Origin: Takakia lepidozioides
Taxonomy: Eukaryota > Plantae > Bryophyta
Length of the DNA stretch: 64,000 nt
NCBI GenBank assembly: GCA_030704615.1
Contig: CM060731.1
Location: forward strand, 78,244,001-78,308,000
Direction: 5' to 3'
Part shown: positions 10,967-46,789 of the stretch, one piece after another
Layout of the letters: every line of letters starts with the position of its first letter
Position numbering within the stretch: position 1 is the stretch's first letter
The notes under the pieces: model-generated
Seen by the model: the letters and a program-made list of their open reading frames with translations, nothing else
Database searches by the model: none
What the model was told of the DNA's origin: nothing
Made by a program: the position numbers and the translations under genes

Positions 10967-11530
10967 GAGATGATTCTGAAGACAAAAATGTAGGATATGA
11001 GTGATGTTGATATGTTCTAAAGTGCAATTGTAAAGATATGCAAATGACTAAAGTGTATGACTGAAACTGTTTCACCGTAATACAGGATAACAGAAACCTA
11101 TCTCTTATGGAAGAGAAAACACACACTAGAGAACAAACCTAGCAGCAAAAGCAAGACTAGACAGACAGTCTAAACAATATAACTGTAAGGTACAACAACA
11201 CAAAAGAGAAAGTGGTACAAAACACACTTATATGCAGAACACTAGCAAATCTTTATAAGCCCCAGACTAGTTTCGCTCAAAACCTGAGCTCTTCAGTGGG
11301 AAGAAAGAAATGGAGTGAAGTACAATGAGCCTCACGCCAGCTTATATACTGTCGAAGGATTTTAATATACTGTCGACAGTTGCTTTGAGATGTTGCAATC
11401 TCTTAAAATCCTTCTTGTATTGTATGAAAGAATTGTCCAGTAACTTTTGAGCAGCCTCCACAAAGGTAGGAGTGTGATCCCGTTTGTTGAAAAACATGCC
11501 CACTCGTGGTCTCGAAGAAGAACACTCCCG
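10967..11530 (-). mobile_element. Inverted PLE segment: ORF1 N-terminal fragment fused to a pLTR (TATA + hammerhead), cut by the chromovirus LTR
   Basis: Minus strand reads RPRVGMFFNKRDHTPTFVEAAQKLLDNSFIQYKKDFKRLQHLKAT (homologous to ORF1 at 38964), then GTATATAAGC, the hammerhead and pLTR-like motifs. Confidence 0.85.
11261..11300 (-). ncRNA. Minimal type I hammerhead ribozyme
   Basis: CCCA-CTGAAGA-GCTCA ggttt TGAGC-GAA-ACTAGT-C^TGGG on the minus strand. Confidence 0.9.
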
Positions 11531-29735: not shown

Positions 29736-31796
29736 AAGATAAAACAACAATAGAACAATAGTGGAAAGAAAAGGGACAATTCTTCATGATTAGTTTGTTT
29801 CTTAGCTATGACTAGTGTTAGGGTAGTGACGTGCAGTTAACGATCTCCCTTTGAAGGTGGGGTTACTTTATTTTCATACTTGCCCTCTAGACACCCGATG
29901 ACAATGCAAATCAATATGGGGATTTGTTTGATCAAGAGGGAGTTCTGCTGCTTGGGAGCGATTCCTTGGACCCAGGAGACTATACCTTTAAGCAGGTTGA
30001 TGCTCCTTCAGCAACAGACACAAGTAAAGGCAGTGGTAAACCCTTCTCCGTGTCATCGGGGTTTTGTCATCGGGATAATTTAGGTTTCCTGTGGCGGTCT
30101 GAGTTTCTTAAGGCTCTGCGGCCTGAATTTGCTGATAGTGAGGTTTAAGTACTTAGGGTTTGTTGTCGCGCACCTCACTTCGGTAAGTTCCCCCCTCAAG
30201 TCATAGTTACTCGCTTGATGCGCGCGCCTAACTCCCAACCTGGCCGCCGGGCCAACTTGGAGCTTCGGCTGCTCACCGGGGCATAACGGTCCCCCCTATG
30301 ATCTCCCAAAGAACCCTTCACCCCTTCGGAACCAGCGGAATTCCCTTTGGTAGTTGGTAGTCCGGAACAGCTCCCCACTCTTTGGTCGCTTTTCGGCTCG
30401 CTCGTTTACTCACTAGTTTTTGGTCACCAACGGGCTTGCACCGTTCTCGGGGTTACTACTCCCTATATATACTTCTGTAGCTGTCCGCGGGGGTTTCACA
30501 AACAACCATGCCATTTTATGGCGAACCACCACAAACACCCTCGACTCCCGGTGACGAGTCGCGGTGAGTTTTGGCCAACCCACCACGGCCCCTATGGACC
30601 GTGATGAGTCCCAAGACTCCCCACGACTCCCACCACGAGGTCTCCGCCCCAGGGTGAGTCCTATGCCACCCCCACTAAGTCCGGCTAAGCTACCACCACC
30701 CCTTGTGGAGCCACCCCCACCGCAACCCGGTGTGCGGGGCTCCACCTAGTGAGCGCCTCCGCCTCTTTGAGTGCCTTGGGCACTCAAGGGTGCTTCAGCC
30801 CCTCATACCTATCGCTGCCACTGCCCCCACCACAGGGGCAGCCCCTCTTGTGTCCCGACCCTCCTGCCCTCAAGGCAAAGGCCCGCGACACACACCCCTA
30901 CCAACAGGGAGTCGATGTCCTCATCGGCTTGTCCATTTTGTGGAAACGAACATCCAAGTTGTGGCATCCCACATCAAGGAGTTTGTTTCCGTACCATGGC
31001 GTCCCATGGCAAAGAACCAAACCCCACACTTGACTCTACTCTCCACTAGCTAGTTCGGCCGACTTCCTCCAAGTCCCGGCCAAGGGTGGAGCCTCTCAAG
31101 CTCCTCCCAGTGCACTCTTCTTGGCCTACTTCCAGGCCAAGGAACGATCCTCCCCGAGGATCGAATCGCCTTACTGCAACAACATTGCTTGCGACCGCTC
31201 ATGATGCCGCTTTTGGCATCACCTTGAGCAAGGGTTCACCTCGAACCCTCTTTGACTAGGAAGATAACCTTGAACCAACCGCGCGCCCCAATCACTACAA
31301 TTGGGTCCGCCTTGGAATGCTGGCCTGAGGTACGGGAACACGCCGAAGCCGCACTACGACTTCGTCCCGAGGCTACACGATTATAGTACGTGAACGGAAG
31401 CAGGTAGCTTCCGTGTTAGCCCGCACTACAAGGCAACCCCCTCGGTAGCGCAGTTATAGTACGCGCACGCGCCAGGTGCGCACTAGCACGTGAACTCCTA
31501 AAGAAGGCGCAAGTTTCATTGCCCCTTGGATGGGAGTCACCCGATTTCGGCACTGCGCAAACACACGATTAACCCAATTTACCTCTCCCACTTTTGTAAG
31601 CTAGCATGCATCCTACACACTAGCCAACCACACCATGCATCACCATTCCAAACAAAATAGGACGCACAACATTTGGAATCCATTTCTTTTATAACAAATT
31701 TTTGTACAATACAAGTTTTTGCAATCAGATTCCTAAGCTAGCTAAGCCAGGCTAAGCATGCATTTCCTCCCCCACGCTCCAAGGTTGATGTCCCCA

Positions 31797-34700
31797 TCAA
31801 CGCTTCTTCCGCTTTTGAGGTCGCCCTTCGAAAACTGCAACCGCCTCGGATGCGTTTCCCATTTCTGAGGCATGCACCCAAGATGCCTCCACATGATGAT
31901 AGCCCTTCCATTTGACGAGATACTCCATTTCTCGGTTCTTGAACCTCCTCGACTTAAGTACTGCCTCTACCTCGTACTCAGGTTTATTTTCATGATCCAA
32001 CAGCACAGGTGGCGGACGCAACACTTGATGCCGATTCGGACGCGCTTCATCTTTGAAGTAAGGCTTCAAAAGGGAGACGTGGAATACTGGATGCACCTTG
32101 CTGTTTGCCGGCAGCTCCAATTCATACACATCCTCATTCATCACCTTCCGGATGCGAAAGGGTCCCGCATACGGAGGTACGAACTTTGGACTCACTTCCG
32201 GAGATAGTCGGAAATTCTTGATGTTCAACCAGACCTCCGTGCCTGCCTCAAACTTCACTTCCCTCCGCTTCCGATTCACCTGCCTTTCATACCGTTTCCT
32301 AGCTTTGGCAATGTTGTACTTTGCGAGCTTCAACAAATGCTCGCATTCTTCCAGTACCACCGCTACTGCCGGTTCCTCAACGTCCTGGGCGGCCCAACTT
32401 GTCGGCACCAGAGGTGCTTTTCCATAGACCAATACGAAAGGGGAAACTCCCGTTGCGGAGTGTTCTGTGTTATTATAACAGAACTATGCCTCGTCTAAGT
32501 GTTCCACCCAGTCTGTTTGGTCTGCCGACACGTAATTCCGCAAGATCTGCTTCACTACGGAATTCATTCTTTCCGTTTGGCCGTCGGTCATAGGTCGGAA
32601 GGCGATGCTCATCTTCAGCCTCGTCCCCATCTTCTTCCAAAGTGCCCTCCAAAATTTACTCGTAAACTTTGGATCGCGGTCCGAGACAATATCCTTCGGG
32701 ACTCCATGATGCTTTAAGACGTGGGCGAAGTAAAGTCAACCTGTTTCCTGCGCTGTAGCCGTCTCCTTGGTGGGGATGAAATGGCCCATTTTACTGAACC
32801 TATCCACCACCACCATGATTGCATCGAATCCTTTTGACAGCGGCATAGCAGTCATGAAATCCATCGAGACGCTTTCCCAAGTCCCCTCTGGAATCGGCAA
32901 GGGTTGTAACAGCCCCGCTTGCTTTTTGTACTCGCTCCGGTTTTGTTGGCATGTGGTGCATGTCTTGACATACTCCTCTGCCTCCTCCCTCAGTTTGGGC
33001 CAGAAATACTCTTTCTTCAAGAGTGCCGTAGTGCGCTTGGCTCCGCCGTGGCCCGCAAGCGGGCTATTATGGCATTCTCTCAAGAGGCTATCTCTGATCC
33101 CTCCCTTCGGCACGTAGAGACGCTTTTGCTTATACCGGAGCAGTCCATTTTGCAAGTGGAACTACGATTTAATCCCCATCCTCAAGTCCTGCATCACGGA
33201 CTTTGCTAGCTCATCCTTCCGGCAAGCCTTCCGGATCTTCCTTTGGAGCGTCGTCTCACCTCTGTACACCAACAGGAGCTACTGCTTTCTACTTAAAGCA
33301 TCGGCCACCACGTTGTCCCGTCCCGGTTTATACTGGCTATCCACGTCGAACACCGCCAAAGTATCTTGCCACCTAAGTTGTTTTGGGGGCAGCTTGGGCT
33401 GCGTGGCAAAATACTTCACCGTGACATTGTCCGTGAACACCTTCACTGGGTTGGAACCAACATAGTGGCGCCAAAGCTCAAGACAGTGCACCACCGCCTT
33501 CATCTCTTTCCCGTGCGTCGGCCACCGACGCTCCACTTCATTCAGTTTCTTACTTTCGTAAGCCACTGGACGTCCATCTTGCATCAATACACCCCCAATC
33601 GCGAAGTCTAACGCATCTGTATGAATCTCGAACGGACGATCGAACTCCGGGATTTTCAAGACTGGAGCTTCCGCCATCCGCTGCTTCAATTCAGCAAAAG
33701 CTTGGCCACAAAAGGTGTTCCATGCCCAGACTTTGGATTTACACAGCCACTCGAATTTGATGATAGCCGGAGCGCAGATCGATCCGGCTGAAATACTTCG
33801 CTCCTGCCAACCGATCGAAAAGGTCGTCGATCCTTGGCAAAGGGTACCAGTTTTTGATAATCACCTTATTCAAAGCCCTGTAATCAACACACATCCACAG
33901 CGTCCCATCCTTCTTGTCTGCGAATAGCACCGGGGCTCCGTAAGGTGACTTACTCGGCCGGATGTACCCCTTTGACATTAGATCTTTGAGCTGAGTCTTC
34001 AGCTCGACCAACTCTCTGTGGCTCAACCGGTAGGGTGCCTTGGCAGGCGGTTCCAATCCCGGTATCACCTCAATCTTGTGGTCAACTCCTCTTCGCGGTG
34101 GTAAGCCGCTTGGTAAATCCTCTGGCATTACATCCTGGTATTTCTCCAAAATCCCCATGATCCAATCTGGGCTCGGCTCCCCATCGCCTTCTCCCTTCAC
34201 TTCTCTAATGAAGAGCAAAAATTGGGGCTCGTGTGCCTCCTCCACGGCCCATTCCATTGCTGATAGAAGGTTTATTCGCCCTCCCACGGGTTTAGGCGTT
34301 TCCGACACTCGTAAGACCTCGCCACCATTCCCACATGGCAGCGTGACTACTCTCTTGCGGCCATCTATGACCGCTCCGGATTTGCTCATAAATGACATCC
34401 CCAAAATGAGATCCACTCCATCGATCTCGCAGATGGTGAAGTTCTCATGTCCCTCCCAACTCCCCAGTTGAAGAGGAACATCAAACGCCAACCTTGTCGC
34501 CAATTGCGGTTCTTCTTTGGCAGAACGCACCTCAATAGAGGCCCCCACATCACTTGTCGAGAGTCCCAGCTTTTGTGCCGTTGCCGGTGTCATGAAGGAG
34601 TGCGACGCTCCTATGTCCACCAACAACGACACGTTAGTTCCGGATATTATCCCATCCATGAACAATAACTGACTCCCTTTACGTAAGGCGCCAGTTTCCT

Positions 34701-35883
34701 GATACAACTCACAAGAAAATTTGCCTACCTTGCAAGTCCTGGCGACCACCGCTTCCACCGCTTCCACCAAGCGACTGATGGTATCTTTCGACAGCTCTGT
34801 GGTCACCCGAGTCATGTTCAATTGCCGGGGCTTCTTGGCCATATGCCCGGGCTCCCCGCAATTGAAACACACTCCATCAAAGGTCGCCTTCTGTCCGCCA
34901 TAGGCAGCTCCACCTGCTTTTCCTTTCGAAGTACCGGGTGCCGCCTTGACTTGTGAAGGCCCTCCCTTCGATTTCCACGTGCCATTGTCGCCGCGTGGCC
35001 TATCCCACTTCTTTTCCGGTCGGAAGGAGTCACCTTCCCGCCGGGTCTTCTTGTGGTTCAGCTCCGTACGGCCTTGTCTTTCACCCTTAGGGACATCCGA
35101 GAAACATTCAGCCCTCTCAATTGCCTCGTTCAAAGTCTTAGGTGGCTTCTCCTCCAACTTCCGCCTGGCCCATGGGCCAGTCCTGCCACAAAGTTGAAGA
35201 CCATTTTTGGTTTTGCCATGTCCGCGACTTCGAGCAACAGCACATTGAAAGCCTGACATATCCCCGAATGTCATCTGTTTTCTTCAAATTCCTCATCTTG
35301 TCCTGGGCGAGCCAGGACGCGTTGAGGGGCACAAACTGCCCTTCATCAATTCCTTGAACCCACTCCAGTTCAAGGTTTCCGGGCTTGGACCTCGGTCGTG
35401 AAGGCGTTTCTGCCACCATTGTTGAGCATAGCCCCTCAATAGGTGGGAGCCACTTCCACCCGATCCTCGTCACTTAACTTGGCCGCCCGGAAGTACTGCT
35501 CTAGCTCCAAGAGCCAGATGTTGAGTGCCTTCCGATTTCGGACGCCCTCGAAGGTGCCGGGTTCCTTAGGCTTCACCTTAAACTTTGCCTTAGTGGAAGT
35601 AGCATTAGCCGCCTTCAACACGTCTTTCAACGTCCCGCCAAATTGCGCCAACAACCCTTTCCAAAAGGCTGCCGGCATGGGAGGCATCTGTTGGTCGGTC
35701 GGAGCTCTCAGGGATTCCTCAGGCTCCGACTCCTCAAATCCCTCCCGCTCTTGAGCGGCTCATTTTCGAAAACATGCATCGCTTCTCAAACGGCCGCCTC
35801 GGTGACACGTCGCCCCCATCGGGCTCACCGGGATCATCATCTTTTGGGCCGTTCCGCTTTCGCTTTGGCTTGCCCGACCCCAT
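31797..35883 (-). pseudogene. gag-PR-RT(part)-RH-INT-chromodomain
   Basis: [35 protein letters not shown] then a jump past YxDD near 33735; HTDA, HNSPLAGH..CTTC, SMDF, GPF, HPVFHVSLLK, YEVEAVL..YLVKWKGY..ASW. Confidence 0.93.
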
Positions 35884-35924
35884 GATGAGGCCAATCCCAA
35901 GGACGATTGCGTACTGAACTCTAT

Positions 35925-35936
35925 GCTCTGATACCA
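35925..35936 (-). promoter_or_regulatory. Primer binding site (tRNA-iMet)
   Basis: TGGTATCAGAGC, 2 nt after the LTR end ...GCGCGACA. Confidence 0.95.
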
Positions 35937-36254
35937 AGTGTCGCGCACCTCACTTCGGTAAGTTCCCCCCTCAAGTCATAGTTACTCGCTTGATGCGCGC
36001 GCCTAACTCCCAACCTGGCCGCCGGGCCAACTTGGAGCTTCGACTGCTCACCGGGGCATAACGGTCCCCCCTACGATCTCCCAAAGAACCCTTCACCCCT
36101 TCGGAACCAGCGGAATTCCCTTTGGTAGTTGGCAGTCCGGAACAGCTCCCCACTCTTTGATCGCTTTCCGGCTCGCTCTGTCGAAGCACCCTTGAGTGCC
36201 CAAGGCACTCAAGGAGGCGGAGGCGCGCACTAGGTGGAGCCCTTTCAAATCCTC

Positions 36255-37585
36255 TATTCTATTCTAGTTTCCTGTCTCTTAGGATCTCTCCTTTCAGGTT
36301 TGATTCACATGATCTGGAATTTTTCCAGGGGTGCATAACTGGCCCCCCTAAAACTTGTTTGCCCGGATCGTGTTTATCTTGCACCCGGTGCATCCGCGTT
36401 GTACTGCTGCACTTGTTTTGACGCTTTATGCGAACCCTAAACTTTCTTATAGTGTTAGCTGCAACACATCTTTAATCGCCTTCACGTAATGGAGGCAGAT
36501 GTTGATCTTCATTCTTTTGACCAAGCTGCTCATTCATGTGATGAGGCAACAATACGAAGACCGAGCCGTGTTTTGTCTTGGAGGTCGGAAGGTGGGGATC
36601 GTGGTTGGACACGTTCAGGACAACACAGCTGCAGGCTTTAGCAAGACAATGGTTGCGCGATGGTCTGCGTGTGCAAAGCTCTTACGAGTTGTGCGTTCCT
36701 TTCGAAGTGTTTCAGCCCTTACGACTTTGCACAACATGCTCTAACTTCAGCATAATTGGTTGTTGCATAGTCATAAACTCACGGAGTTAGTTGTATTTGA
36801 GAGATATGCAATTGACTATTTGGATGATTTTTATTCTTGGATCTAGTTCTCTCTTGTCGAGAACTTGTTTTCATCCACTGGATGACTTTCTCCCACCGAG
36901 ACTTTTTGGACTATTCTCCGTACGAGACATCTGTTGGATGGTTTTTCTCCTCACGAGACATCCACTGGAAGATTGTCCACACGAGGCAGTTCACTCCTAG
37001 TAGTATATAAGCGGGGGGTGGGGTTTGTATCTCATTCCTTTTCTTTCCCACTGAGGAGCTCACGCGCTGAGCGAAACTAGTCTGGGGTCTATAAAGATTT
37101 GGCTTCACTACTTTGCATGATCTTGCCTCGTGGTCTCACCCTTTGAAGTTGTCGAGTTTTAGATGCGTTTGTATCCCCTGCTTTAGATCATTGCATTGTT
37201 ATGTGCTCTGTGTCTATACGGCATGCCATAAACTCCCTTTCGAGTAGTGCATGTGAGATCTGCATCTAAGTTGTTCCTAGTGTGTCCATTCTCTTGCAAA
37301 ACAGAGATAGGGTTCTTATTCTCCTGTGCATCCAGTGAAATAGTTCTCATACGTACATCTTGCATAGGTTTGCAGTTGCATTTCAGGACACCTCGCATAC
37401 TTCTATTCTAGTTTCCTGTCTCTCAGGATCTCTCTTTTCAGGTTTGATTCACAGGATCTGAAATTTTTCCAGGGGTGCATAACTGGCCCCCCTAAAATTT
37501 GTTTGCCCGGATCGTGTTTATCTTGCACCCGGTGCATCCGCGTTGTACAGCTGCACTTATTTTGACGCTTTATGCGAACCCTAAA
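36255..37585 (+). mobile_element. Non-autonomous PLE-related unit (~1.15 kb period), partial tandem ending in CCCTAAA
   Basis: Near-identical to 42903-44714; shares TATA, hammerhead and 3' motifs with the PLE-A pLTR; no RT. Confidence 0.85.
37047..37086 (+). ncRNA. Minimal type I hammerhead ribozyme
   Basis: CCCA-CTGAGGA-GCTCA cgcgc TGAGC-GAA-ACTAGT-C^TGGG. Confidence 0.88.
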
Positions 37586-37606
37586 CCCTAAACCCTAAAC
37601 CCTAAA
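37577..37606 (+). repeat. Telomeric run (CCCTAAA)4
   Basis: Direct reading. Confidence 0.95.
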
Positions 37607-37695
37607 ACTTGTTTGCCCGGATCGTGTTTATCTTGCACCCGGTGCATCCGCGTTGTACTTCTACACTTGTTTTGACGCTTTATGTGAACCCTAAA
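37600..37695 (+). mobile_element. ~95-bp extreme 3' end of the non-autonomous unit, between two telomeric runs
   Basis: Matches ~37490-37585. Confidence 0.85.
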
Positions 37696-37710
37696 CCCTA
37701 AACCCTAAAA
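37687..37710 (+). repeat. Telomeric run (CCCTAAA)3 capping 5'-truncated PLE-A
   Basis: Joined directly to TTACACTTTGAGGG, which equals 41646 onward. Confidence 0.95.
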
Positions 37711-38330
37711 TTACACTTTGAGGGAGAGCACACGGGCAGGTTTTTCTGAGATCAGGCAACTGTTCTATGAGCGACTGCGTGCTCGAGGCTATCCAAAGTC
37801 TTTTATCTTGGAGTGTTTTGTGCTTTGTGACTATGCACAACGTGCTACACTGTTGACTTCAGAGTCCACTCGTAAGTTGACGGGCAAGCGGCCCCCCTTG
37901 GTTTTGAAACTTGAGCATTCGCGTTATACTCAAGCTCTAAGCTTTGAGGGAGTCCTAAACCCTAAACTTCATGAGGGCTTTTTGAAAGTTCCGCAGTTAG
38001 CGTCCTTTGACAGACCTATGGTATGTTGGAAGAGGGCACGGAACTTGCGTTCCTATCTAGTTCGTGCTATGTTACAAATCTAGAGGCTAGTTGTATTTGA
38101 GACATGCAGTTAGCTTCTAGTTTGGATGATTATCCATTTTGGAGAGAACATTAGGATGTTTTTCATCTAGATTTTCATGCGTTGGATATTTCTCCCCTAC
38201 CGAGAAAACTTTGGATGTTTTTCATCTAAGTTTTCATGTGTTGGACGATCTCTCCAGCCAAGACAATTTTGGATGTTTTCCATCCATTAGGTATTTTCTC
38301 TCCCCCCCCAGACAAGTTCACTTTCCGCAG

Positions 38331-38337
38331 TATATAA
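38331..38337 (+). promoter_or_regulatory. pLTR TATA box (also 37004, 42264, 43659, and ~11343-11349 on minus)
   Basis: GTATATAAGC conserved ~45-50 nt upstream of the hammerhead in all three pLTR types. Confidence 0.75.
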
Positions 38338-38379
38338 GCGGGGTGAGGGGTGCACATTGTATCTCTTTTCCTTCTCTTT

Positions 38380-38419
38380 CCCACTGATGAGCTCACGCGC
38401 TGAGCGAAACTAGTTTGGG
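38380..38419 (+). ncRNA. Minimal type I hammerhead ribozyme
   Basis: CCCA-CTGATGA-GCTCA cgcgc TGAGC-GAA-ACTAGT-T^TGGG. Confidence 0.9.
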
Positions 38420-38963
38420 GATTATAGAGATTTGCTTTGCTGCATCTTGTGTTCTTGTCTCTTTGTCTCATTGGCGGCGTTGTTGTTGTTTGTTGAGTTT
38501 TAGATTTGATCTTCTGCATAGTTCATTGCATTCATTTGCTTTGTGTCTATTGTAGTGCATGTTTTAAACTCCTTTTCGAGTGTTACATGTTAGATCTCCT
38601 TCTAAGACTGCTCTTTAGAGTGTCTATTCTCTTTCTCAGAGATAGGTTACTATTCTCCTGTCCTTACAGTGAATTAGTTTCATCACACACACTTGCCTCT
38701 TGCATATACTTGCATTTGCACTTTAGAACGTTGCAACATCACTCCCACTCTGTTCTATTCTAGTTTTGTGTCTCAGGATCGATTCTTTTAGTTTTGATTC
38801 ACAGGCTAGATATTTCTACAAGCTTTCTAAGGTGTCCATAACTGGCCCCCCTAAAACTTGTTTGCACTTTGCTACTAATGCACCCGGTGCATTCGCGGTT
38901 CGTACTCTGTTGCACTGCTACATGTATTTGTTTCCACTCTTTTGTAGACCCTAAACATTTGTT

Positions 38964-39920
38964 ATGATGTTAGCTGCAACTTCTGAACCTTCTTCTTCCA
39001 AGCGTCCTAGGATAGAGATGAATAGTGATGGTGCTCCTGCAGAAGATCGACCGTCTTATTCGCCTCCAAGGGATTTATCTCCTACTCCAAGGCCGCAAGT
39101 TGGGATCTTTTTCAACCAGAATGATCATTCTCCAGACTTTGTGGATGCTATTCGCAAGTTGTTGGACAACTCTCTGGCGCAGTACAAGAAGGATTTCAAG
39201 AGACTTCAACGTCTCAAGGCAACTTCCGACAAACTCAAATCTCAAAAAGCTGCCGGTGAAATTCCTCATGCTTGTAGAGTTGCTTGTCCGAAGTTGGTCA
39301 TCTCTTCTGCCTCTGTCCAGACGTCTTTGGATGCTACTGTCCTAGCAGCCACTGTTGCTTACCATTCAGCTTTGCAAACAGCTTTTATTCAAGCTCATTC
39401 TGATCTGGTACAAGAAGCTGAAGCTGTTTTGAGCAAATCCTCTGATGTTTTCATTGCTCGACTCAGGGAGATCAACGTGCATGTGGATGTATCTTCTTGC
39501 ACAGACCAGATTCAGGATTCTTCTTGGCTCTTTGATGAGCTTGACTTTGTGTGCACTCAAGCCACTACAGCCTGGTATGCCGGAATTTCTTGCTTTCGCG
39601 CCAACCACAACCTCGGTACTGCAGTGAGGGATAAGGCGTTACATGAAAGGAACCAAGCTAGAGATCAGGCCATGGCAGATGCTGATGTTCTTCCTACTGA
39701 GCCTACCATTGCCGAGCTAGTAAGGAAAGAGGTGCAGAAACAACTTTCCCACTCACGAAAGAAAACTTCTCTCTCTCCTACTCGCCCTAAGCAACATCAA
39801 CGAGCGCGTTCTTCCTCTCCTAACCACAAGAGGCGACAACAGCGTGGCCGCTCTCACCTGCTCGACGAGTCTCCAAGACTCAACCTACCAGCCGAGGCAC
39901 TTCAGCAAAAGCCAAGGTAA
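38964..39920 (+). CDS. PLE-A ORF1 (helical/coiled-coil-like, basic S/R-rich tail); true C-terminus probably continues in the -1 frame to ~40161
   Basis: 318-aa ORF starting 7 nt after the pLTR CCCTAAAC; homologous to PLE-B ORF1. Confidence 0.85.
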   Translation: MMLAATSEPSSSKRPRIEMNSDGAPAEDRPSYSPPRDLSPTPRPQVGIFFNQNDHSPDFVDAIRKLLDNSLAQYKKDFKRLQRLKATSDKLKSQKAAGEIPHACRVACPKLVISSASVQTSLDATVLAATVAYHSALQTAFIQAHSDLVQEAEAVLSKSSDVFIARLREINVHVDVSSCTDQIQDSSWLFDELDFVCTQATTAWYAGISCFRANHNLGTAVRDKALHERNQARDQAMADADVLPTEPTIAELVRKEVQKQLSHSRKKTSLSPTRPKQHQRARSSSPNHKRRQQRGRSHLLDESPRLNLPAEALQQKPR

Positions 39921-39951
39921 CTTTCTCCAAGGCAAACTCTTCAAAGCAGCA

Positions 39952-39998
39952 GGGAAATGGCCAACAGCGGAATGGGACTGCTCGCACCCGTTTCGCTG
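39952..39998 (+). promoter_or_regulatory. Probable -1 programmed ribosomal frameshift signal
   Basis: G GGA AAT heptamer, 6-nt spacer, 12-bp hairpin CAGCGGAATGGG/CCCGTTTCGCTG; conserved in PLE-B (26677-26683, minus). Confidence 0.75.
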
Positions 39999-42018
39999 CA
40001 TCGCGTTCATCTTCTCCGAGCAAATCCGCCCTACGTTCTCAGACCCGTTCTGGTTCTGGACAACAAAAGTCGGGGCAAAACCAACAACAGAAGCTCGAGA
40101 AGAAGGTCACATGGGCAGATCCAAGCCGAAGAGAGCTCGCAAGCTCTTCTGGTGGCCGTTGAGGGATGTAGAAGGCTATAAGCTTTATCTTTTTTCTTGC
40201 AAGAGAGTCTCTCAGGCAGAGAACAGGTTAACCAACGTGGCCATCCACAACATGGCCAATCGTCCACTCTCTTGTTTTGAAAAGAAGCTTTTAGGCCTAG
40301 GTTTGAGTTTTATTCCTCATCCCACTCCTCCTTCTCCCTCTTCTATTCTTGATGCTTATGACTCTTTGGCTCGATCTTTACGTCTTCGATATCACTTCAG
40401 GGATGCTAGAGATAGACCCATTCCTCCTTTCAGAGTTCCTCAACCTTCTTGGGATCAGTGTGTGCGACTTCCTGCTTTGGAAAGCATTATCATCGAGGGT
40501 CGCAACATTGTAGAGACTCGGTTAAGGGAGGTGGCTCGCTCTGCCTACAGGTCTTCTATTCGAGGTCACCTCAAGTCTGCGATACGCTGTCTGAGCAGAG
40601 ATGAGTCCATCGTCATCAAGCCAGCAGACAAAAATCTTGGGTTGGTGATCATGCGGAAGGACTGGTATGTGGATGAGGCACACCGCCAACTCCACGATGG
40701 ACAAGTTTACGAATCCGTGGCAGAGATCCCATTTGACAATCTCACATATGGTTTGGATGCATTGCTCGCTTCCGCTCTCTTGTTTGGATTGATTGACAGG
40801 CAGACAAGGGACTTTTTGGCGTTCAAGCCCCAAGGGGGCTACCGACCCTGCATGTTTTATCTCGTGCCCAAAATGCACAAGCCTGTGGTGGTTGGGAGGC
40901 CGATTTGTTCATACAACGGATATGTTTTTGAGCACGCATCCAAGTGGTTGCATCACCATCTGTTTCCCATTCTGCTCGAGGAAGATAACCATTTGATAGA
41001 TTCTATTTCTTTGTTGAAAGATCTGTCGGATAGGCAACTTCCTGGCGACGTGCTTTTATTCACCTTTGATGTGGAGTCATTGTATCCTAGCATTCCTACT
41101 GGGGACGGGCTTCGACGATTGAAGGAGATGATTGCCGGCAAGTTCAAGTCACCTCGGTTTGAAAGATTCGTCCTGAGTCTTTCTCGCATGGTGTTGGAGA
41201 ATAACTATCTTCAATTTGGCTCGAGCTATTGGCATCAGATCCGAGGCACGGCAATGGGTAGCAACTTTGCTGTTGTTTATGCTTGTCTCTTTCTTTGCAG
41301 CTTAGAAAGAGAGTTGGCTGGTGCTGGAGGAGGCATGTGGCCTCTATACTACAAGAGATACATCGATGATGGATTTGGAATTTGGGCAGGATCTCGGGCA
41401 AGTTTGGAGGCTTGGCTCGATGGATACAACTCTCTTAGTCCCACAATTCGGATTCAAAGGGTAATCTCTGAGTCTACGGTTGACATTCTTGATATTCAGT
41501 TCTTCAAGGGAGTTGATTTTGTCAACCGTGGGATTTTATCTTCGAGATGTCATCAAAAGGCACTCAACAGATACCAGTATTTGCCATGGACCTCGTGTCA
41601 TCCACGACACCAAAAACGAGCATTCATCATCGGCGAATTACGACGTTACACTTTGAGGGAGAGCACACGGGCAGGTTTTTCTGAGATCAGGCAACTGTTC
41701 TATGAGCGACTGCGTGCTCGAGGCTATCCAAAGTCTTTTATCTTGGAGTGTTTTGTGCTTTGTGACTATGCACAACGTGCTACACTGTTGACTTCAGAGT
41801 CCACTCGTAAGTTGACGGGCAAGCGGCCCCCCTTGGTTTTGAAACTTGAGCATTCGCGTTATACTCAAGCTCTAAGCTTTGAGGGAGTCCTAAACCCTAA
41901 ACTTCATGAGGGCTTTTGAAAGTTCCGCAGTTAGCGTCCTTTTGACAGACCTATGGTATGTTGGAAGAGGGCACGGAACTTGCGTTCCTATCTAGTTCGT
42001 GCTATGTTACAAATCTAG
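39952..42018 (+). CDS. PLE-A ORF2 reverse transcriptase without endonuclease; compensating 1-bp indels at ~41915 and ~41941 are probably sequence errors
   Basis: LLGLGLSF, KPADKNLG, PKMHK, GRPI, FDVESLY, QIRGTAMGS, YKRYIDD, SCHP; the duplicate at 37718-38083 reads through to RSYLVRAMLQI*. Confidence 0.93.
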
Positions 42019-42312
42019 AGGCTAGTTGTATTTGAGACATGCAGTTAGCTTCTAGTTTGGATGATTATCCATTTTGGAGAGAACATTAGGATGTTTTTCA
42101 TCTAGATTTTCATGCGTTGGATATTTCTCCCCTACCGAGAAAACTTTGGATGTTTTCATCTAAGTTTTCATGTGTTGGACGATCTCTCCAGCCAAGACAA
42201 TTTTGGATGTTTTCCATCCATTAGGTATTTTCTCCCCCCCCCAGACAAGTTCACTTTCCGCAGTATATAAGCGGGGTGAGGGGTGCACATTGTATCTCTT
42301 TTCCTTCTCTTT

Positions 42313-42352
42313 CCCACTGATGAGCTCACGCGCTGAGCGAAACTAGTTTGGG
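42313..42352 (+). ncRNA. Minimal type I hammerhead ribozyme
   Basis: Same as 38380-38419. Confidence 0.9.
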
Positions 42353-42878
42353 ATTATAGAGATTGCTTTGCTGCATCTTGTGTTCTTGTCTCTTTGTCTC
42401 ATTGGCGGCGTTGTTGTTGTTGTTGAGTTTTAGATTTGATCTTCTGCATAGTTCATTGCATTCATTTGCTTTGTGTCTATTGTAGTGCATGTTTTAAACT
42501 CCTTTTCGAGTGTTACATGTTAGATCTCCTTCTAAGACTGCTCTTTAGAGTGTCTATTCTCTTTCTCAGAGATAGGTTACTATTCTCCTGTCCTTACAGT
42601 GAATTAGTTTCATCACACACACTTGCCTCTTGCATATACTTGCATTTGCACTTTAGAACGTTGCAACATCACTCCCACTCTGTTCTATTCTAGTTTTGTG
42701 TCTCAGGATCGATTCTTTTAGTTTTGATTCACAGGCTAGATATTTCTACAAGCTTTCTAAGGTGTCCATAACTGGCCCCCCTAAAAACTTGTTTGCACTT
42801 TGCTACTAATGCACCCGGTGCATTCGCGGTTCGTACTCTGTTGCACTGCTACATGTATTTGTTTCCACTCTTTTGTTG

Positions 42879-42903
42879 ACCCTAAACCCTAAACCCTAAA
42901 CCC
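42879..42903 (+). repeat. Telomeric run between the PLE-A 3' end and a 5'-truncated non-autonomous unit
   Basis: ACCCTAAACCCTAAACCCTAAACCC. Confidence 0.95.
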
Positions 42904-44714
42904 ATACTTCTATTCTAGTTTCCTGTCTCTCAGGATCTCTCCTTTCAGGTTTGATTCACAGGATCTGAAATTTTTCCAGGGGTGCATAACTGGCCCCCCT
43001 AAAACTTGTTTGCCCTGATCGTGTTTGTCTTGCACCCGGTGCATCCGCGTTGTACTGCTGCACTTGTTTTGACGCTTTATGCGAACCCTAAACTTTCTTA
43101 TAGTGTTAGCTGCAACACATCTTTAATCGCCTTCACGTAATGGAGGCAGATGTTGATCTTCATTCTTTTGACCAAGCTGCTCACTCATGTGATGAGGCAA
43201 CAATACGAAGACCGAGCCGTGTTTCGTCTTGGAGGTCGGAAGGTGGGGATCGTGGTTGGACACGTTCAGGACAACACAGCTGCAGGCTTTAGCAAGACGA
43301 TGGTTGCGCGATGGTCTGCGTGTGCAAAGCTCTTACGAGTTGTGCGTTCCTTTCGAAGTGGTTTCAGCCCTTACGACTTTGCACAACATGCTCTAACTTC
43401 AGCATAATTGGTTGTTGCATAGTCATAAACTCACGGAGTTAGTTGTATTTGAGAGATATGCAATTGACTATTTGGATGATTTTTATTCTTTGGATCTAGT
43501 TCTCTCTTGTCGAGAACTTGTTTTCATCCACTGGATGACTTTCTCCCACCGAGACTTTTTGGACTATTCTCTCCGTACGAGACGTCTGTTGGATGGTTTT
43601 TCTCCTCACGAGACATCCACTGGAAGATTGTCCACACGAGGCAGTTCACTCCTAGTAGTATATAAGCGGGGGGTGGGGTTTGTATCTCATTCCTTTTCTT
43701 TCCCACTGATGAGCTCACGCGCTGAGCGAAACTAGTCTGGGGTCTATAAAGATTTGGCTTCACTACTTTGCATGATCTTGCCTCGTGGTCTCACCCTTTG
43801 AAGTTGTCGAGTTTTAGATGCGTTTGTATCCCCTGCTTTAGATCATTGCATTGTTATGTGCTCTGTGTCTATACGGCATGCCATAAACTCCCTTTCGAGT
43901 AGTGCATGTGAGATCTGCATCTAAGTTGTTCCTAGTGTGTCCATTCTCTTGCAAAACAGAGATAGGGTTCTTATTCTCCTGTGCATCCAGTGAAATAGTT
44001 CTCATACGTACATCTTGCATAGGTTTGCAGTTGCATTTCAGGACACCTCGCATACTTCTATTCTAGTTTCCTGTCTCTCAGGATCTCTTCTTTCAGGTTT
44101 GATTCACAGGATCTGAAATTTTTCCAGGGGTGCATAACTGGCCCCCCTAAAACTTGTTTGCCCGGATCGTGTTTGTCTTGCACCCGGTGCATCCGCGTTG
44201 TACTGCTGCACTTGTTTTGACGCTTTATGCGAACCCTAAACTTTCTTATAGTGTTAGCTGCAACACATCTTTAATCGCCTTCACGTAATGGAGGCAGATG
44301 TTGATCTTCATTCTTTTGACCAAGCTGCTCATTCATGTGATGAGGCAACAATACGAAGACCGAGCCGTGTTTCGTCTTGGAGGTCGGAAGGTGGGGATCG
44401 TGGTTGGACACGTTCAGGACAACACAGCTGCAGGCTTTAGCAAGACGATGGTTGCGCGATGGTCTGCGTGTGCAAAGCTCTTACGAGTTGTGCGTTCCTT
44501 TCGAAGTGGTTTCAGCCCTTACGACTTTGCACAACATGCTCTAACTTCAGCATAATTGGTTGTTGCATAGTCATAAACTCACGGAGTTAGTTGTATTTGA
44601 GAGATATGCAATTGACTATTTGGATGATTTTTATTCTTTGGATCTAGTTCTCTCTTGTCGAGAACTTGTTTTCATCCACTGGATGACTTTCTCCCACCGA
44701 GACTTTTTGGACTA
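42903..44714 (+). mobile_element. Non-autonomous PLE-related unit, ~1.6 tandem copies (period 1148 bp), abutting unique DNA
   Basis: CATACTTCTATTCTAG at 42903 and 44051; homology stops at GGACTA 44714. Confidence 0.88.
43702..43741 (+). ncRNA. Minimal type I hammerhead ribozyme
   Basis: CCCA-CTGATGA-GCTCA cgcgc TGAGC-GAA-ACTAGT-C^TGGG. Confidence 0.92.
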
Positions 44715-46789
44715 GAACATCTTGTGAGCAGTCGCTCCCAGGTTTCCTTTCTGGAAAAAAAAGAAAGAAAAAAAGAACATCACATATTCTTTAAAACCAT
44801 TAAATTATATATTAATGGAAATAACTATCCAGGTATTCATACCCTCTGGGTATATTTTGGCATATATATCCATACCCGGGGGTTATATAGAAATCTGAAA
44901 AGTTAATTTACCCATACCCGGAGGGTAAATAAGTTTTTGAGATTTCAATTTATCCATACCCGGAGGGTAAATGATTTGACAAAAATAATTTACTTATACC
45001 CTAAGGATATATTGAAATCAATATACCCAAACAACACTGCTATGGCAGCCATGGCGGGAGGAGACCAGACATCTAGGACTCGCAAACCGAGACTGGAAAG
45101 ATGCCCACAGAAGGTGATGCGTATTGTTCAGGAAGTGTGATATGTGGGCCTACTCTCTTTGCTCTATTTTATATACGAGAGAAAGGCCACCGCTTGATGG
45201 CTTGTGACATTGGTACGGATGTGTGGACTGAAGTTGCTGTACAAATGCCTGATTTTGGAGCTTGTTCTGGAATGTTGTAGACTCATATCGCCACATGTGT
45301 ACACTCATGTACAAGGGAGGTCATGATCAGTGTTGGACTGGTATCGTATTTTGAACACACCAGACTGGTGCTGGTATATAGGCCTCCGGCCAATTGTGAT
45401 ACCATGGAGGGACTGGTATTGGCAAAAATCTAAGATTTTGATACCATGGTGGTATCAATAATACATGATTAGTGTGGTGTTTTACGGGTATCAATAGCAA
45501 GAGTTTTTAGAAATCAATACCAGGGTAATATCAATCCTGGTCTGGTATAAAAAAAACTCCCACTTCTCATATAAATGTGTACAAGCATGCATCTCATTGA
45601 TATTATTCCTCAACATATCCAGCTTCACATATTTCATCTTCTGGCCTGATTTTTATTTTGCTTATTGAAAGCTGCATCCATATCGTGCATAGTGCATACT
45701 GCGCCGTCGATATTGATACCTAGGTTTTCCTGACAAAAATGGACCTGGTATCAAGTACCAGATTTTCAACCACCTACCAGACTGGTAGGGTATCGTCCAC
45801 AGTACTAGGAAGCACATACCAGGCCAATACGGGTATATGCTAGGTAGTGGCCTGAGGTGACACCAGACTTGGTCTGTACTTCATACCAGTATACATACCA
45901 ATATTGATACCAGTTTCTTATCGGTATACCAGTCCAAAACTGGTCATGATATGTGACAATTACATTTTGAGGAGTTATTTTCGTTTGTTGCCAAGTTGGG
46001 ATTCTTTGAGCGTTGGGATAAGTGCGCGAAGTGAGGAGGGTTTGGGTAAGCGGTGGGAGGGGGTCCATTTCTTTGGATTTGGACCAACAGCAAATTCTAA
46101 TCCTCCCAATCCTTTCCAAAACTCCCCCATACACCAGTTAACTTAGTCCTTTTACCCTGTTTATGTACTGTCTCAAGGCGGTGGCCCCTCCTAGTCTATA
46201 AGGGGGCACCACCTCATCCTACTTCTGCAAAGCTCTATTATTGACGGACAGACTGTCTATCTTTACACATCTGTCTTGGCAGAGGTGCGACGGAGTCCAC
46301 CTATATCCTATACTGGGACAGACGGAGGGTTGAGCCAGCAATGAATAAACTCTCTGGAAGCTAGAACTGATGGGTATGATCTCTTGGTCGCAACTGACTC
46401 TTTGTGAGACAGATGGGAGAGAACGTTTACTCGGCAGGATTGTGGTGAGTCAAAGAGAAAACATGTATATATCATATCATGGGTCAGTCTTGCAACAGCA
46501 TGATTCCACTTGATAGAGCAGTTGATGGGGGTTTGTCAATCACTGATACAATGAAAAACACACGGAGAAAGGAACAGAAGAAAGAAGAACACCTAGTTTA
46601 TGTACACTGGGAAGAATAACTGGGGATGCTGATTGCTTATAAGTGAATGCAATCTGAAGCCCATCGTATCGGGAGCTGCTCCATCCGCTTTTGTGAGATT
46701 CTTACGGCTGATCTGGGGGAGCTGCAGCACCCTTATATAGATGGTGGACATGATCAGTTGGCTCTTTTCTTTATGGTGACCCGCGCTGG

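What the first reader, a model, noticed from the sequence alone, without database searches (positions are those of the whole stretch)
42903..44714. Non-coding ~1.15 kb hammerhead-bearing mini-element that seems to parasitise the telomeric PLE
Seen: the unit is a diverged pLTR (from TAGTTGTATTTGAGA through TATA, hammerhead, CCCTAAAC and GTTAGCTGCAAC, which are the first ORF1 codons in PLE-A) plus ~330 bp of unrelated sequence replacing both ORFs. It occurs in seamless head-to-tail tandems and in three separate layers. It is well diverged from the PLE-A pLTR except at these motifs, so it is a family of its own. Inference: a retrozyme-like, telomere-targeted non-autonomous element, possibly copied from a ~1148-nt circular RNA by PLE RT.
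Basis: partly seen in the sequence, partly recalled or inferred. Interest (0 to 1): 0.8.

Follow-up and report, generated by a model that had tools for sequence, protein, structure and literature searches.

The report
ORF-less ribozyme passenger of telomeric retroelement
A 1,148-bp protein-free repeat in a plant genome keeps the promoter box, self-cutting hammerhead RNA and telomere-pairing motif of the endonuclease-less Penelope-like retroelement beside it. It has lost both genes, so it is most likely that element's hitch-hiker, copied onto chromosome ends by a borrowed reverse transcriptase.

Summary
The unit is 1,148 bp and lies head to tail. It occurs in three layers, and each of the two intact 3' ends stops at ACCCTAAAC joined to (CCCTAAA)3-4.

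Apart from a 323-nt insert, the unit is a 72%-identical relative of the neighbouring element's (PLE-A's) pseudo-LTR. A 40-nt hammerhead block is identical between the two.

The hammerhead is real. Seven sequences from four lineages give 95.6% pairing and 7 of 13 compensatory pairs. Helix III is a palindrome, the dimer type. A TATA box lies 47-53 nt upstream in every lineage.

The unit has no credible ORF. A DNA run of the same organism suggests it is far more abundant than PLE-A's genes, with a 3'-to-5' decline in depth.

Best reading: a non-autonomous derivative of a Coprina-like, endonuclease-less Penelope-like element, primed on telomeric overhangs through CCCUAAAC.

The circular-RNA, retrozyme-like part is untested. 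PLE-A and its relatives form more-than-unit tandems too, so tandems alone do not show a circle. Folding of the unit is not unusually compact. Probable RNA contigs cover only part of the unit.

All the parts are known: Selaginella telomeric PLEs with hammerheads, animal PLE-derived retrozymes and Chlamys non-autonomous elements. I did not find this combination described for plants. This scan had already noted similar repeats on other pieces of this genome.

The parts
36259..37587 (+). Mini-element layer 1: 1.16 units. The 5' end is at the TTCTATTCTAG block and the 3' end at ACCCTAAAC.
   Evidence: 98.5% identical to 42903-44232. Sequence read.
37051..37082 (+). Hammerhead of layer 1 (CUGAGGA; G at the free core position 7).
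   Evidence: Pattern search. Row mini_L1 in the covariation alignment.
37580..37606 (+). Telomere repeats (CCCTAAA)3-4 between layers 1 and 2.
37600..37696 (+). Mini-element layer 2: a 97-nt tail running from the internal CCCCTAAAAC motif to ACCCTAAAC.
   Evidence: 95-96% identical to the unit's 3' module. A 110-bp TRF repeat covers it.
37689..37711 (+). Telomere repeats (CCCTAAA)3 between layer 2 and PLE-A.
37712..42880 (+). PLE-A, the candidate helper: a 1.31-unit insertion. It comprises an ORF2 tail plus pLTR, ORF1 (38964-39920), ORF2 (39844-42018, with a compensated frameshift pair near 41913-41940) and the 3' pLTR ending at ACCCTAAAC.
   Evidence: ORF2 homologues are PLE-type RTs.
42872..42902 (+). 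Telomere repeats (CCCTAAA)4 between PLE-A and mini layer 3.
42903..44714 (+). Mini-element layer 3: 1.58 units head to tail. The right end is cut inside the pLTR repeats, not at a telomere repeat.
43085..43093 (+). ACCCTAAAC, the inferred telomere-pairing and RT-start motif (second copy at 44233-44241).
   Evidence: It is the 3' junction position of layers 1 and 2 and of PLE-A. Relatives carry the same motif upstream of ORF1.
43104..43116 (+). Remnant of the first ORF1 codons (TGTTAGCTGCAAC), with the start codon lost.
   Evidence: Alignment to PLE-A.
43117..43439 (+). 323-nt insert that replaces ORF1 and ORF2. Its longest ORF is 85 aa (43150-43407).
   Evidence: No significant match to PLE-A genes. 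No Pfam family above cut-off. No homologue by word search. The ORF is frameshifted in the layer-1 copy.
43440..43656 (+). Upstream part of the pLTR. It starts with TAGTTGTATTTGAGA and holds four or five degenerate repeats of about 28 nt (TGGA..TCTCC..CGAGAC).
   Evidence: PLE-A has 58-nt repeats at the same place.
43657..43671 (+). TATA block. TATATAA (43659-43665) lies 47 nt before CUGAUGA.
   Evidence: Identical in PLE-A. A TATA box sits at -47 to -53 in all eight copies from four lineages.
43693..43752 (+). Type I hammerhead: helix I, CUGAUGA, helix II GCUCA/UGAGC, GAAA and the palindromic helix III ACUAGU. Predicted cleavage is after C43737.
43738..44232 (+). 495-nt leader between the cleavage site and ACCCTAAAC. 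Conserved blocks include TTCTATTCTAGTTT (44056-44069) and the palindrome TGCACCCGGTGCA (44179-44191).
   Evidence: Folding z-score -0.9.

Best explanation
The 1,148-bp unit is a non-autonomous, protein-free derivative of an endonuclease-less (Coprina/Athena-type) Penelope-like element.

It keeps all the non-coding parts of such an element:
- the upstream repeats of the pseudo-LTR;
- a TATA box 47 nt ahead of a dimer-type type I hammerhead;
- a 495-nt leader;
- the ACCCTAAAC motif;
- the first codons of ORF1.

The 3-kb ORF1-ORF2 region is replaced by 323 nt of non-coding sequence.

Inferred mechanism: its RNA is copied in trans by the reverse transcriptase of an autonomous relative (PLE-A or a closer one not in this window). 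That enzyme starts on a telomeric G-rich 3' overhang paired to CCCUAAAC. Telomerase then adds a few repeats before the next element lands, which builds the layers.

Insertions longer than one unit arise in the same way as for PLE-A. That way is unresolved: uncleaved multimeric RNA, template jumps, or a ligated circle.

Shown here: the anatomy, the junctions, the conservation and covariation of the ribozyme, the lack of coding capacity, and the amplification.

Inferred only: mobilisation in trans, priming on the overhang, and ribozyme cleavage in vivo.
For: - Period of 1,148 bp and three layers.
- The two intact mini 3' ends and PLE-A's stop at the same ACCCTAAAC joined to (CCCTAAA)3-4.
- 72% identity to PLE-A's pLTR over its whole length, with an identical 40-nt hammerhead block. 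By my own arithmetic the chance of such a run is about 0.72^40 per position.
- Hammerhead covariation: 95.6% of cells paired, 7 of 13 pairs compensatory, 0 of 500 shuffles as high. Helix III changes from ACUAGU to AUGCAU in one relative and stays a palindrome.
- A TATA box lies 47-53 nt upstream of the ribozyme in four lineages that share no other pLTR sequence.
- Relatives show the same order: ORF2, TATA, hammerhead, leader, CCCTAAAC, ORF1.
- No coding capacity. The longest ATG ORF is 85 aa, frameshifted in one of three copies, with no Pfam family above cut-off and no homologue.
- PLE-A ORF2 is a PLE-type RT. Its best hits are 46-51% identical, in Selaginella, Cryptomeria and unnamed assemblies. 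It has no endonuclease domain; one distant hit carries GIY-YIG.
- In DNA run X4, summed contig depth is 18.9 on PLE-A's genes. On the mini unit it is 339-2,016. It falls from the ACCCTAAAC end (1,213-2,016) through the leader (972) and pLTR (about 630) to the insert (339), as 5'-truncated copies would give.
Against: - No RNA or enzymatic evidence exists for mobilisation in trans.
- PLE-A's pLTR is only 72% identical, so the true helper may be another element not seen here.
- Summed contig depth is a poor measure of copy number, as the tool itself warns.
- Layer 3 ends at 44714 inside the pLTR, joined to non-telomeric DNA without microhomology. One of the three 3' junctions therefore does not fit telomere priming as it stands.
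- The 5' ends of layers 1 and 3 lie only about 6 nt apart (positions 44056 and 44050 of the unit). Random truncation does not explain this.
- The locus is now internal to a piece of at least 22.8 Mb, next to a Ty3/gypsy element.
Confidence: 0.75

Rival explanations
1. Retrozyme-like circle. Tandem copies are transcribed and two hammerheads release a 1,148-nt RNA. A host RNA ligase circularises it. The PLE reverse transcriptase then copies the circle by rolling circle onto the telomere, giving seamless insertions longer than one unit.
For: - The priming motif lies 495 nt downstream of the cleavage site and upstream of the rest of the unit. A cleaved linear monomer primed there would therefore yield only the leader. 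A circle explains insertions of 1.16, at least 1.58 and 1.31 units most simply.
- The helix III palindrome is kept by compensatory change. This fits cleavage of multimers and protection of monomers, as described for dimeric hammerheads (PMC4209133).
- Animal PLE-derived retrozymes do form circular RNAs (PMC7229834).
Against: - There is no RNA evidence. The probable RNA runs X7 and X8 hold contigs only for 43220-43726 and 43379-43547, and nothing downstream of the cleavage site.
- Both local mini arrays have a single hammerhead.
- Folding is not unusually stable, with z of -0.9 and -1.9. Known retrozyme circles are highly self-paired.
- For an endonuclease-bearing PLE, unprocessed RNA was the main substrate in vitro, and no reads ended at the hammerhead site (PMC11167929).
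- Tandems are general in this clade.
Confidence: 0.2
2. Dead deletion derivative spread by DNA-level events only. A single internally deleted PLE copy was multiplied by unequal crossing-over, segmental duplication or break repair in repeat-rich DNA, and was never mobilised as RNA.
For: - The locus is internal and rearranged. A broken gypsy element abuts layer 1, with an inverted 60-nt duplicate.
- Layer 3's right end is not telomeric.
- The 5' ends of layers 1 and 3 nearly coincide.
- Another deletion derivative in the window is an ORF1 fragment fused to TATA and hammerhead at 11360-11512. This shows that such deletions are common.
Against: - Layers 1 and 2 each end at ACCCTAAAC plus their own short telomere tract, and PLE-A separates them from layer 3.
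- Between-layer divergence (1.5%) exceeds within-layer divergence (0.45%).
- Depth in the DNA run declines from the 3' end to the 5' end and is far above that of PLE-A's genes.
- Earlier notes of this scan report similar protein-free repeats on other pieces. I have not checked those notes.
Confidence: 0.08
3. Fragment of an autonomous element. The unit is the UTR and pLTR part of a still-coding PLE family, and the 'insert' is the worn-down tail of that family's RT gene. It would then be a decayed full element rather than a distinct non-coding family.
For: - Two short matches to PLE-A's ORF2 tail lie exactly 99 nt apart in both sequences and in the same frame: 43276 with 41665, and 43375 with 41764 (16 of 18 nt).
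- The right 160 nt of the insert against the last 300 nt of ORF2 beat all but 1 of 300 shuffles.
- Run X7 holds a contig that matches 43220-43726 and then diverges to the left.
Against: - BLASTP E-values are 0.06-0.46, and hhalign probability against a profile of seven ORF2 tails is 0.3%.
- The 60 nt between the two anchors are 17% identical, and at least one of 2,879 other offsets reaches a slightly higher overall identity (0.375 against 0.369).
- The left half of the insert shows nothing.
- No ORF-bearing copy with this pLTR is in the window.
Confidence: 0.15

Closest known systems
Endonuclease-deficient, telomere-associated Penelope-like elements (Coprina and Athena; Gladyshev and Arkhipova 2007, as summarised in PMC8557442 and PMC6431247). 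Hammerheads in the pLTRs of the Selaginella members are reported in PMC4209133.
   Same: - The RT-bearing neighbour PLE-A is of this kind.
- Reverse-complement telomere repeat at the 3' junction.
- Short telomere tracts between stacked, 5'-truncated copies.
- Pseudo-LTR formed by partial tandems.
- Hammerhead in the pLTR.
   Different: - The unit has no RT or any other gene.
- The telomere motif lies 495 nt downstream of the hammerhead. In rotifer Terminons it lies immediately next to it (PMC6431247).
- Helix III is a 6-nt palindrome (dimer type). PMC4209133 describes canonical helices for Selaginella.
Animal non-LTR retrozymes (PMC7229834; preprint 10.64898/2026.07.22.740005)
   Same: - Protein-free.
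- Type I hammerhead.
- Head-to-tail copies.
- Sequence kinship with the pLTR of co-resident PLEs.
- Presumed use of a PLE RT.
   Different: - Those are 170-400 nt, highly self-paired, in long arrays dispersed in intergenic DNA, and shown to be circular RNAs.
- This unit is 1,148 nt and not unusually structured. It joins telomere repeats and occurs in a plant. No circle has been shown.
Plant LTR retrozymes (PMC4918200)
   Same: A plant, non-autonomous, hammerhead-bearing retroelement of about 1 kb with a promoter in the repeat.
   Different: - Those have type III hammerheads in true LTRs, a tRNA-Met primer-binding site, a polypurine tract and Ty3/gypsy helpers.
- Here the hammerhead is type I.
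- The only PBS match nearby (35925-35936) belongs to the neighbouring gypsy element.
- The presumed helper is a PLE.
Non-autonomous Chlamys elements such as MRC1 of Chlamydomonas (PMC8557442)
   Same: [quoted passage not shown]
   Different: Chlamys is an endonuclease-bearing clade with genome-wide insertion. Most members lack canonical hammerheads, and there is no telomere priming.
HeT-A of Drosophila telomeres (PMC5537684). The comparison rests on my own knowledge.
   Same: A telomere-specific retroelement that lacks its own RT and relies on a partner.
   Different: HeT-A is a non-LTR (jockey-clade) element that encodes Gag, uses poly(A) ends, has no ribozyme, and replaces telomerase instead of alternating with it.

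Membership tests
Type I hammerhead ribozyme | Conserved catalytic core (C3 U4 G5 A6 N7 G8 A9, G12 A13 A14, A15.1-U16.1, non-G at position 17). | tested here: met
   CUGAUGA, GAAA and GUC^ are all present at 43706-43737. The only core change among copies is at the free position 7, which is U, G or A.
Type I hammerhead ribozyme | Helices I, II and III supported by covariation. | tested here: met
   Seven sequences from four lineages: 95.6% of cells paired, 7 of 13 pairs with changes on both sides, 0 of 500 shuffles as high. Slid controls reach 21-44% pairing.
Type I hammerhead ribozyme | Reaches the curated Rfam score. | tested here: not met
   No match at gathering score. HH9 gives 17-22 bits against a cut-off of 52, and only for PLE-A's copies. 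PMC4209133 treats short-helix-III PLE hammerheads as atypical 'minimal' variants; that such variants generally fall below Rfam cut-offs is my own expectation, not something I tested.
Type I hammerhead ribozyme | Self-cleavage. | not testable with these tools
   Needs in vitro transcription of monomer and dimer constructs.
Endonuclease-deficient telomere-associated PLE (Coprina/Athena type), as a non-autonomous derivative | Reverse-complement telomere repeat at the 3' end, joined to telomere repeats. | tested here: met
   Layers 1 and 2 and PLE-A all end at ACCCTAAAC plus (CCCTAAA)3-4. Layer 3's 3' end is lost.
Endonuclease-deficient telomere-associated PLE (Coprina/Athena type), as a non-autonomous derivative | Pseudo-LTR or partial head-to-tail tandem with a hammerhead. 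| tested here: met
   Insertions of 1.16 and 1.58 units. The pLTR is homologous to PLE-A's over its full length.
Endonuclease-deficient telomere-associated PLE (Coprina/Athena type), as a non-autonomous derivative | PLE-type RT without GIY-YIG endonuclease (a feature of the helper, not of the unit). | tested here: met
   PLE-A ORF2 hits Selaginella, Cryptomeria and Closterium proteins at E 1e-120 to 1e-186. It carries the KPADKNLG (DKG-type) and YIDD motifs and has no endonuclease. The local Pfam copy gave no hit. The unit itself encodes nothing.
Endonuclease-deficient telomere-associated PLE (Coprina/Athena type), as a non-autonomous derivative | Mobilised in trans by a PLE RT. | not testable with these tools
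   Inferred from shared cis elements and shared junction type only.
Animal-type non-LTR retrozyme | Short (170-400 nt), highly self-paired tandem unit. | tested here: not met
   The unit is 1,148 nt. Folding z-scores are -0.9 (leader) and -1.9 (the rest).
Animal-type non-LTR retrozyme | Accumulates as circular RNA. | tested here: inconclusive
   Only assembled contigs of two runs guessed to be RNA were available. They cover 43220-43726 and 43379-43547. Contigs cannot show ends or circles.
Plant LTR retrozyme | Type III hammerheads in LTRs, tRNA-Met PBS and polypurine tract. | tested here: not met
   The hammerhead is type I, with helix I open. There is no PBS match in the unit; the one at 35925-35936 belongs to the gypsy element. 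I did not search for a polypurine tract.

The most novel reading that the evidence does not exclude
The unit is a plant, PLE-derived retrozyme. A 1.15-kb RNA would be released by dimeric hammerhead cleavage, ligated into a circle, and copied by rolling-circle reverse transcription onto chromosome ends. It would then be the missing link between Penelope-like elements and plant retrozymes, which the 2017 review (PMC5680766) proposed on general grounds. It would also be a second, RNA-circle-templated way of lengthening a plant telomere.
Probability: 0.2. Interest if true: 0.8.

Novelty: new variant of a known kind. Interest (0 to 1): 0.5.

Why it matters
- It shows what a telomere-attaching Penelope-like element needs in cis. 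A natural deletion has removed both genes and kept the promoter, the ribozyme, the leader, the telomere motif and the pLTR repeats.
- It places a PLE-derived, hammerhead-bearing, non-coding element in a land plant. This bears on the proposal that retrozymes descend from PLEs.
- The geometry gives a clean test bed for how PLE templates longer than one unit arise: circle, multimer or template jump. The geometry is TATA 47 nt before the ribozyme and the priming motif 495 nt after the cut.
- The stack records alternating telomerase and retroelement additions at a former chromosome end.

Tried and rejected
- Rfam at gathering score found nothing.
- A metagenome scan with the hammerhead block found nothing.
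- Exact-protein look-ups of the 85-aa ORF and of ORF1 found nothing.
- tRNA search found nothing in 36000-45000.
- A by-sequence look-up in the scan's notes was blank, which means nothing.
- Two scripts meant to give a z-score for circular folding of the whole unit timed out. I obtained only the energies, -340.7 kcal/mol circular and -345.6 linear, and used strand folding on two parts instead.
- I first read the ends of the X7 contigs, both 11 nt before the cleavage site (42337 and 43726), as RNA ends. They are exactly where the first 31-mer shared by PLE-A and the mini begins (the shared block starts at 43697). They are therefore de Bruijn graph breaks, not molecule ends.
- I tested whether the insert is a decayed ORF2 tail. 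Two colinear anchors exist, but BLASTP, hhalign and an offset scan do not make it significant.
- The loose ends of the X7 and X8 contigs do not occur in the window.
- An snRNA-type USE upstream of the TATA box is convincing only in relative L005 (GTCCCACATAC, 33 nt before the TATA). It is weak in the mini and absent in PLE-A.
- I did not use the large representative protein search. The word search, Pfam and the frameshift already leave the 85-aa ORF without support.
Full report
WHAT IS THERE

Self-comparison of the window shows a repeat with a period of 1,148 bp: 42903-43566 matches 44051-44714 at 99.5%. It occurs three times:
- 36257-37586: 1.16 units, 98.5% identical to the reference.
- 37600-37696: a 97-nt tail.
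- 42903-44714: 1.58 units.

It consists of:
- a partial upstream copy (37712-38083, the tail of ORF2);
- a 5' pseudo-LTR (38087-38963);
- ORF1 (38964-39920);
- ORF2 (39844 to about 42018);
- a 3' pseudo-LTR that ends at 42880.

Layers 1 and 2 and PLE-A each end at ACCCTAAAC followed by three or four CCCTAAA repeats. The + strand carries the C-rich telomere strand. The stack therefore reads as successive additions to a chromosome end that lay to the left, oldest on the right.

RELATION TO PLE-A

The unit aligns with PLE-A's pseudo-LTR over the whole length of the latter at 72% identity (588/817). Exact blocks are:
- the pLTR start (43440-43454);
- a TATA block (43657-43671);
- a 40-nt hammerhead block (43697-43736);
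- several leader blocks;
- ACCCTAAAC (44233-44241);
- the first ORF1 codons (44252-44261, start codon lost).

The homology stops at codon 6 of ORF1 on one side. On the other side it resumes 4 nt after PLE-A's ORF2 stop codon. In between, 323 nt (43117-43439) replace about 3 kb of coding sequence.

That insert shows no significant similarity to PLE-A's genes by BLASTN, BLASTX, BLASTP or profile comparison. There is a hint only. Two short matches to the ORF2 tail lie exactly 99 nt apart in both sequences and in the same frame. The stretch between them is unlike, and the whole is not significant.

The longest ATG ORF of the unit is 85 aa. It has no Pfam family above cut-off and no homologue by the word search. 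A 1-nt deletion breaks it in the layer-1 copy. The unit is non-coding.

THE RIBOZYME

The motif at 43693-43752 has the full hammerhead core. Helix I is open, so it is type I. Helix II is 5 bp. Helix III is the 6-nt palindrome ACUAGU. The pattern occurs five times in the window against 0.02 expected. A third pLTR family at 11265-11304 on the minus strand also carries it.

Rfam does not call the motif at its curated score, so I tested it by comparison. PLE-A's ORF2 has relatives at 46-51% identity. I fetched contigs for three of them. They share no alignable pLTR sequence with this genome except the ribozyme and the telomere motif.

Over seven sequences from four lineages, 95.6% of cells pair and 7 of 13 pairs show changes on both sides. 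None of 500 shuffles reaches this. In one relative, helix III is AUGCAU instead of ACUAGU. It is still a palindrome, which fits a ribozyme that acts as a dimer. PMC4209133 describes this for animal PLE hammerheads. It describes canonical helices for Selaginella.

PROMOTER

A TATA box lies 47-53 nt upstream of CUGANGA in all eight copies from the four lineages. Transcription would then begin some 15 nt ahead of the ribozyme. Cleavage would remove a short capped leader and leave a 5'-OH RNA. This is inference.

AMPLIFICATION AND RNA

Runs of the same (coded) organism hold the unit. All four runs I laid are kept as assembled contigs, so ends and levels cannot be read.

In DNA run X4, the summed contig depth is 18.9 over PLE-A's genes and 339-2,016 over the unit. 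It declines from the ACCCTAAAC end (1,213-2,016) through the leader (972) and pLTR (about 630) to the insert (339). This is the pattern that 5'-truncated copies primed at ACCCTAAAC would give. The tool warns that such depths are not copy numbers.

Two runs guessed to be RNA hold contigs for 43220-43726 and 43379-43547, and also for PLE-A from 40784 to 42337. Neither holds anything downstream of either hammerhead. Both contigs stop 11 nt before the cleavage site. That is exactly where the 31-mers shared by the two families begin, so the stop is an assembly break and not an RNA end. The lack of any downstream contig remains unexplained.

One RNA-type contig diverges from the unit left of 43220. 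A much deeper one shares only 43379-43408. Parts of the insert therefore occur in other contexts.

HOW IT MOST LIKELY WORKS

The unit keeps every non-coding part of a telomere-attaching, endonuclease-less PLE and nothing else. Its two intact 3' ends join telomere repeats at the same nucleotide as PLE-A's. I therefore read it as a non-autonomous derivative. Its RNA would be copied by the RT of an autonomous relative, starting on a telomeric G-overhang paired to CCCUAAAC.

The motif lies 495 nt downstream of the cleavage site and upstream of the insert and pLTR. A cleaved linear monomer primed there would therefore yield only the leader. Such short tails exist; layer 2 is one. Copies of a full unit or more need one of three things: uncleaved multimeric RNA, a jump from the 5' end to a 3' end, or a ligated circle.

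The data here cannot choose among these. PLE-A itself is a 1.31-unit insertion that crosses two hammerhead sites. All three fetched relatives assemble as cyclic, unit-length contigs whose terminal overlap (15-115 nt) matches or lies close to the assembler's word size. Tandems are thus the habit of the clade. For an endonuclease-bearing PLE, internal RT initiation just inside the ORF and use of unprocessed RNA have been shown in vitro (PMC11167929). I give the circle about 0.2.

WHAT DOES NOT FIT

- Layer 3 ends at 44714 inside the pLTR repeats, against non-telomeric DNA and without microhomology.
- The 5' ends of layers 1 and 3 lie about 6 nt apart (unit positions 44056 and 44050), at the start of a conserved block. 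That is unlikely for random truncation (roughly 1 in 80).
- Layer 1 abuts a rearranged Ty3/gypsy chromovirus, not telomere repeats.
- The locus is now internal to a piece of at least 22.8 Mb.

COMPARISON WITH WHAT IS KNOWN

- Endonuclease-less PLEs at telomeres, including in Selaginella, and their hammerheads are known (PMC4209133, PMC8557442, PMC6431247).
- Tandem hammerhead repeats in Selaginella were mentioned as putative retrozymes, and a PLE origin of retrozymes was proposed (PMC5680766).
- Animal non-LTR retrozymes are regarded as non-autonomous PLE derivatives (PMC7229834; preprint 10.64898/2026.07.22.740005).
- Non-autonomous Chlamys elements with pLTRs exist in Chlamydomonas (PMC8557442).
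- In three literature searches I did not find a protein-free, telomere-primed, hammerhead-bearing derivative of an endonuclease-less PLE described in a plant.

It is therefore a new variant of a known kind. This scan had already noted similar protein-free repeats of about 1.17 kb on other pieces of the same genome. I did not check those notes.

LIMITS

- I could not search the rest of the genome.
[quoted passage not shown] 2017) are not held. I know them only through later papers and my own knowledge.

Noticed in passing
window 10965-11512, minus strand: A third pLTR family. An ORF1 fragment (about codons 43-97) is fused directly to TATA and hammerhead (CUGAAGA, loop GGUUU) across a repeated GACAGTATAT. 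This is another internal-deletion derivative. Its leader is cut at 10965 by the TG terminus of a gypsy LTR.
   Followed up: partly
window 12961, 24560 (minus strand), 37953, 41888: Every ORF2 copy contains TCCTAAACCCTAAAC, which codes for LNPKL. Relatives in other plants keep LNPKL or LNPTL at that place. The RT gene therefore carries a conserved telomere-like stretch.
   Followed up: partly
L001-L005 (relatives of PLE-A ORF2 in Logan and ENA assemblies): All are unit-length contigs whose two ends overlap by 15-115 nt, matching or close to the assembler's word size. The three contigs that encode the same protein are circular permutations of one another. These elements exist as tandems or circles in those samples. 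Whether the runs are RNA or DNA is unknown.
   Followed up: partly
window 43659-43665, 38331-38337, 11342-11348 (minus strand); L002, L004, L005: A TATA box sits 47-53 nt before the hammerhead in four lineages that have no other pLTR similarity. A plant snRNA-type USE-like motif (GTCCCACATAC) lies 33 nt before the TATA in L005. Weaker look-alikes occur in L002 and in the mini.
   Followed up: partly
window 44050-44056 (unit position); 36259 and 42903: The 5' ends of two separate mini layers lie about 6 nt apart, at the start of the conserved block TTCTATTCTAGTTT. This may be a preferred RT stop, an RNA end or a recombination hot spot.
   Followed up: no
window 43878-44064: Run X6 holds a 223-nt contig that returns to its own start after 193 nt. 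This points to a 193-bp tandem sub-repeat of the leader elsewhere in the organism. Its joint lies in the same TTCTATTCT block.
   Followed up: no
window 43379-43408: A 434-nt contig of run X8 (guessed to be RNA), with depth 557, shares only these 30 nt with the unit and then diverges. An abundant unrelated sequence therefore carries this piece of the insert.
   Followed up: partly
window 41913-41940: PLE-A's full ORF2 copy has a 1-nt loss and a 1-nt gain 25 nt apart, relative to the upstream partial copy and to contigs of runs X4 and X7. This is either a compensated frameshift that changes about 8 residues or a homopolymer error of the assembly.
   Followed up: partly
window 30164-36250: A Ty3/gypsy chromovirus lies on the minus strand. 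It has protease, RT-RNase H, integrase and chromodomain, with a tRNA-Met PBS at 35925-35936. It is rearranged: only 240 nt of LTR are paired, and a 60-nt inverted duplicate lies at 30737-30796 and 36183-36242. It abuts mini layer 1.
   Followed up: partly
window 42380-42886 and 43738-44050: In run X7 (guessed to be RNA), contigs cover the parts upstream of both hammerheads (PLE-A and mini) and nothing downstream of either. This could reflect cleavage or termination in vivo, the library type, or chance.
   Followed up: no
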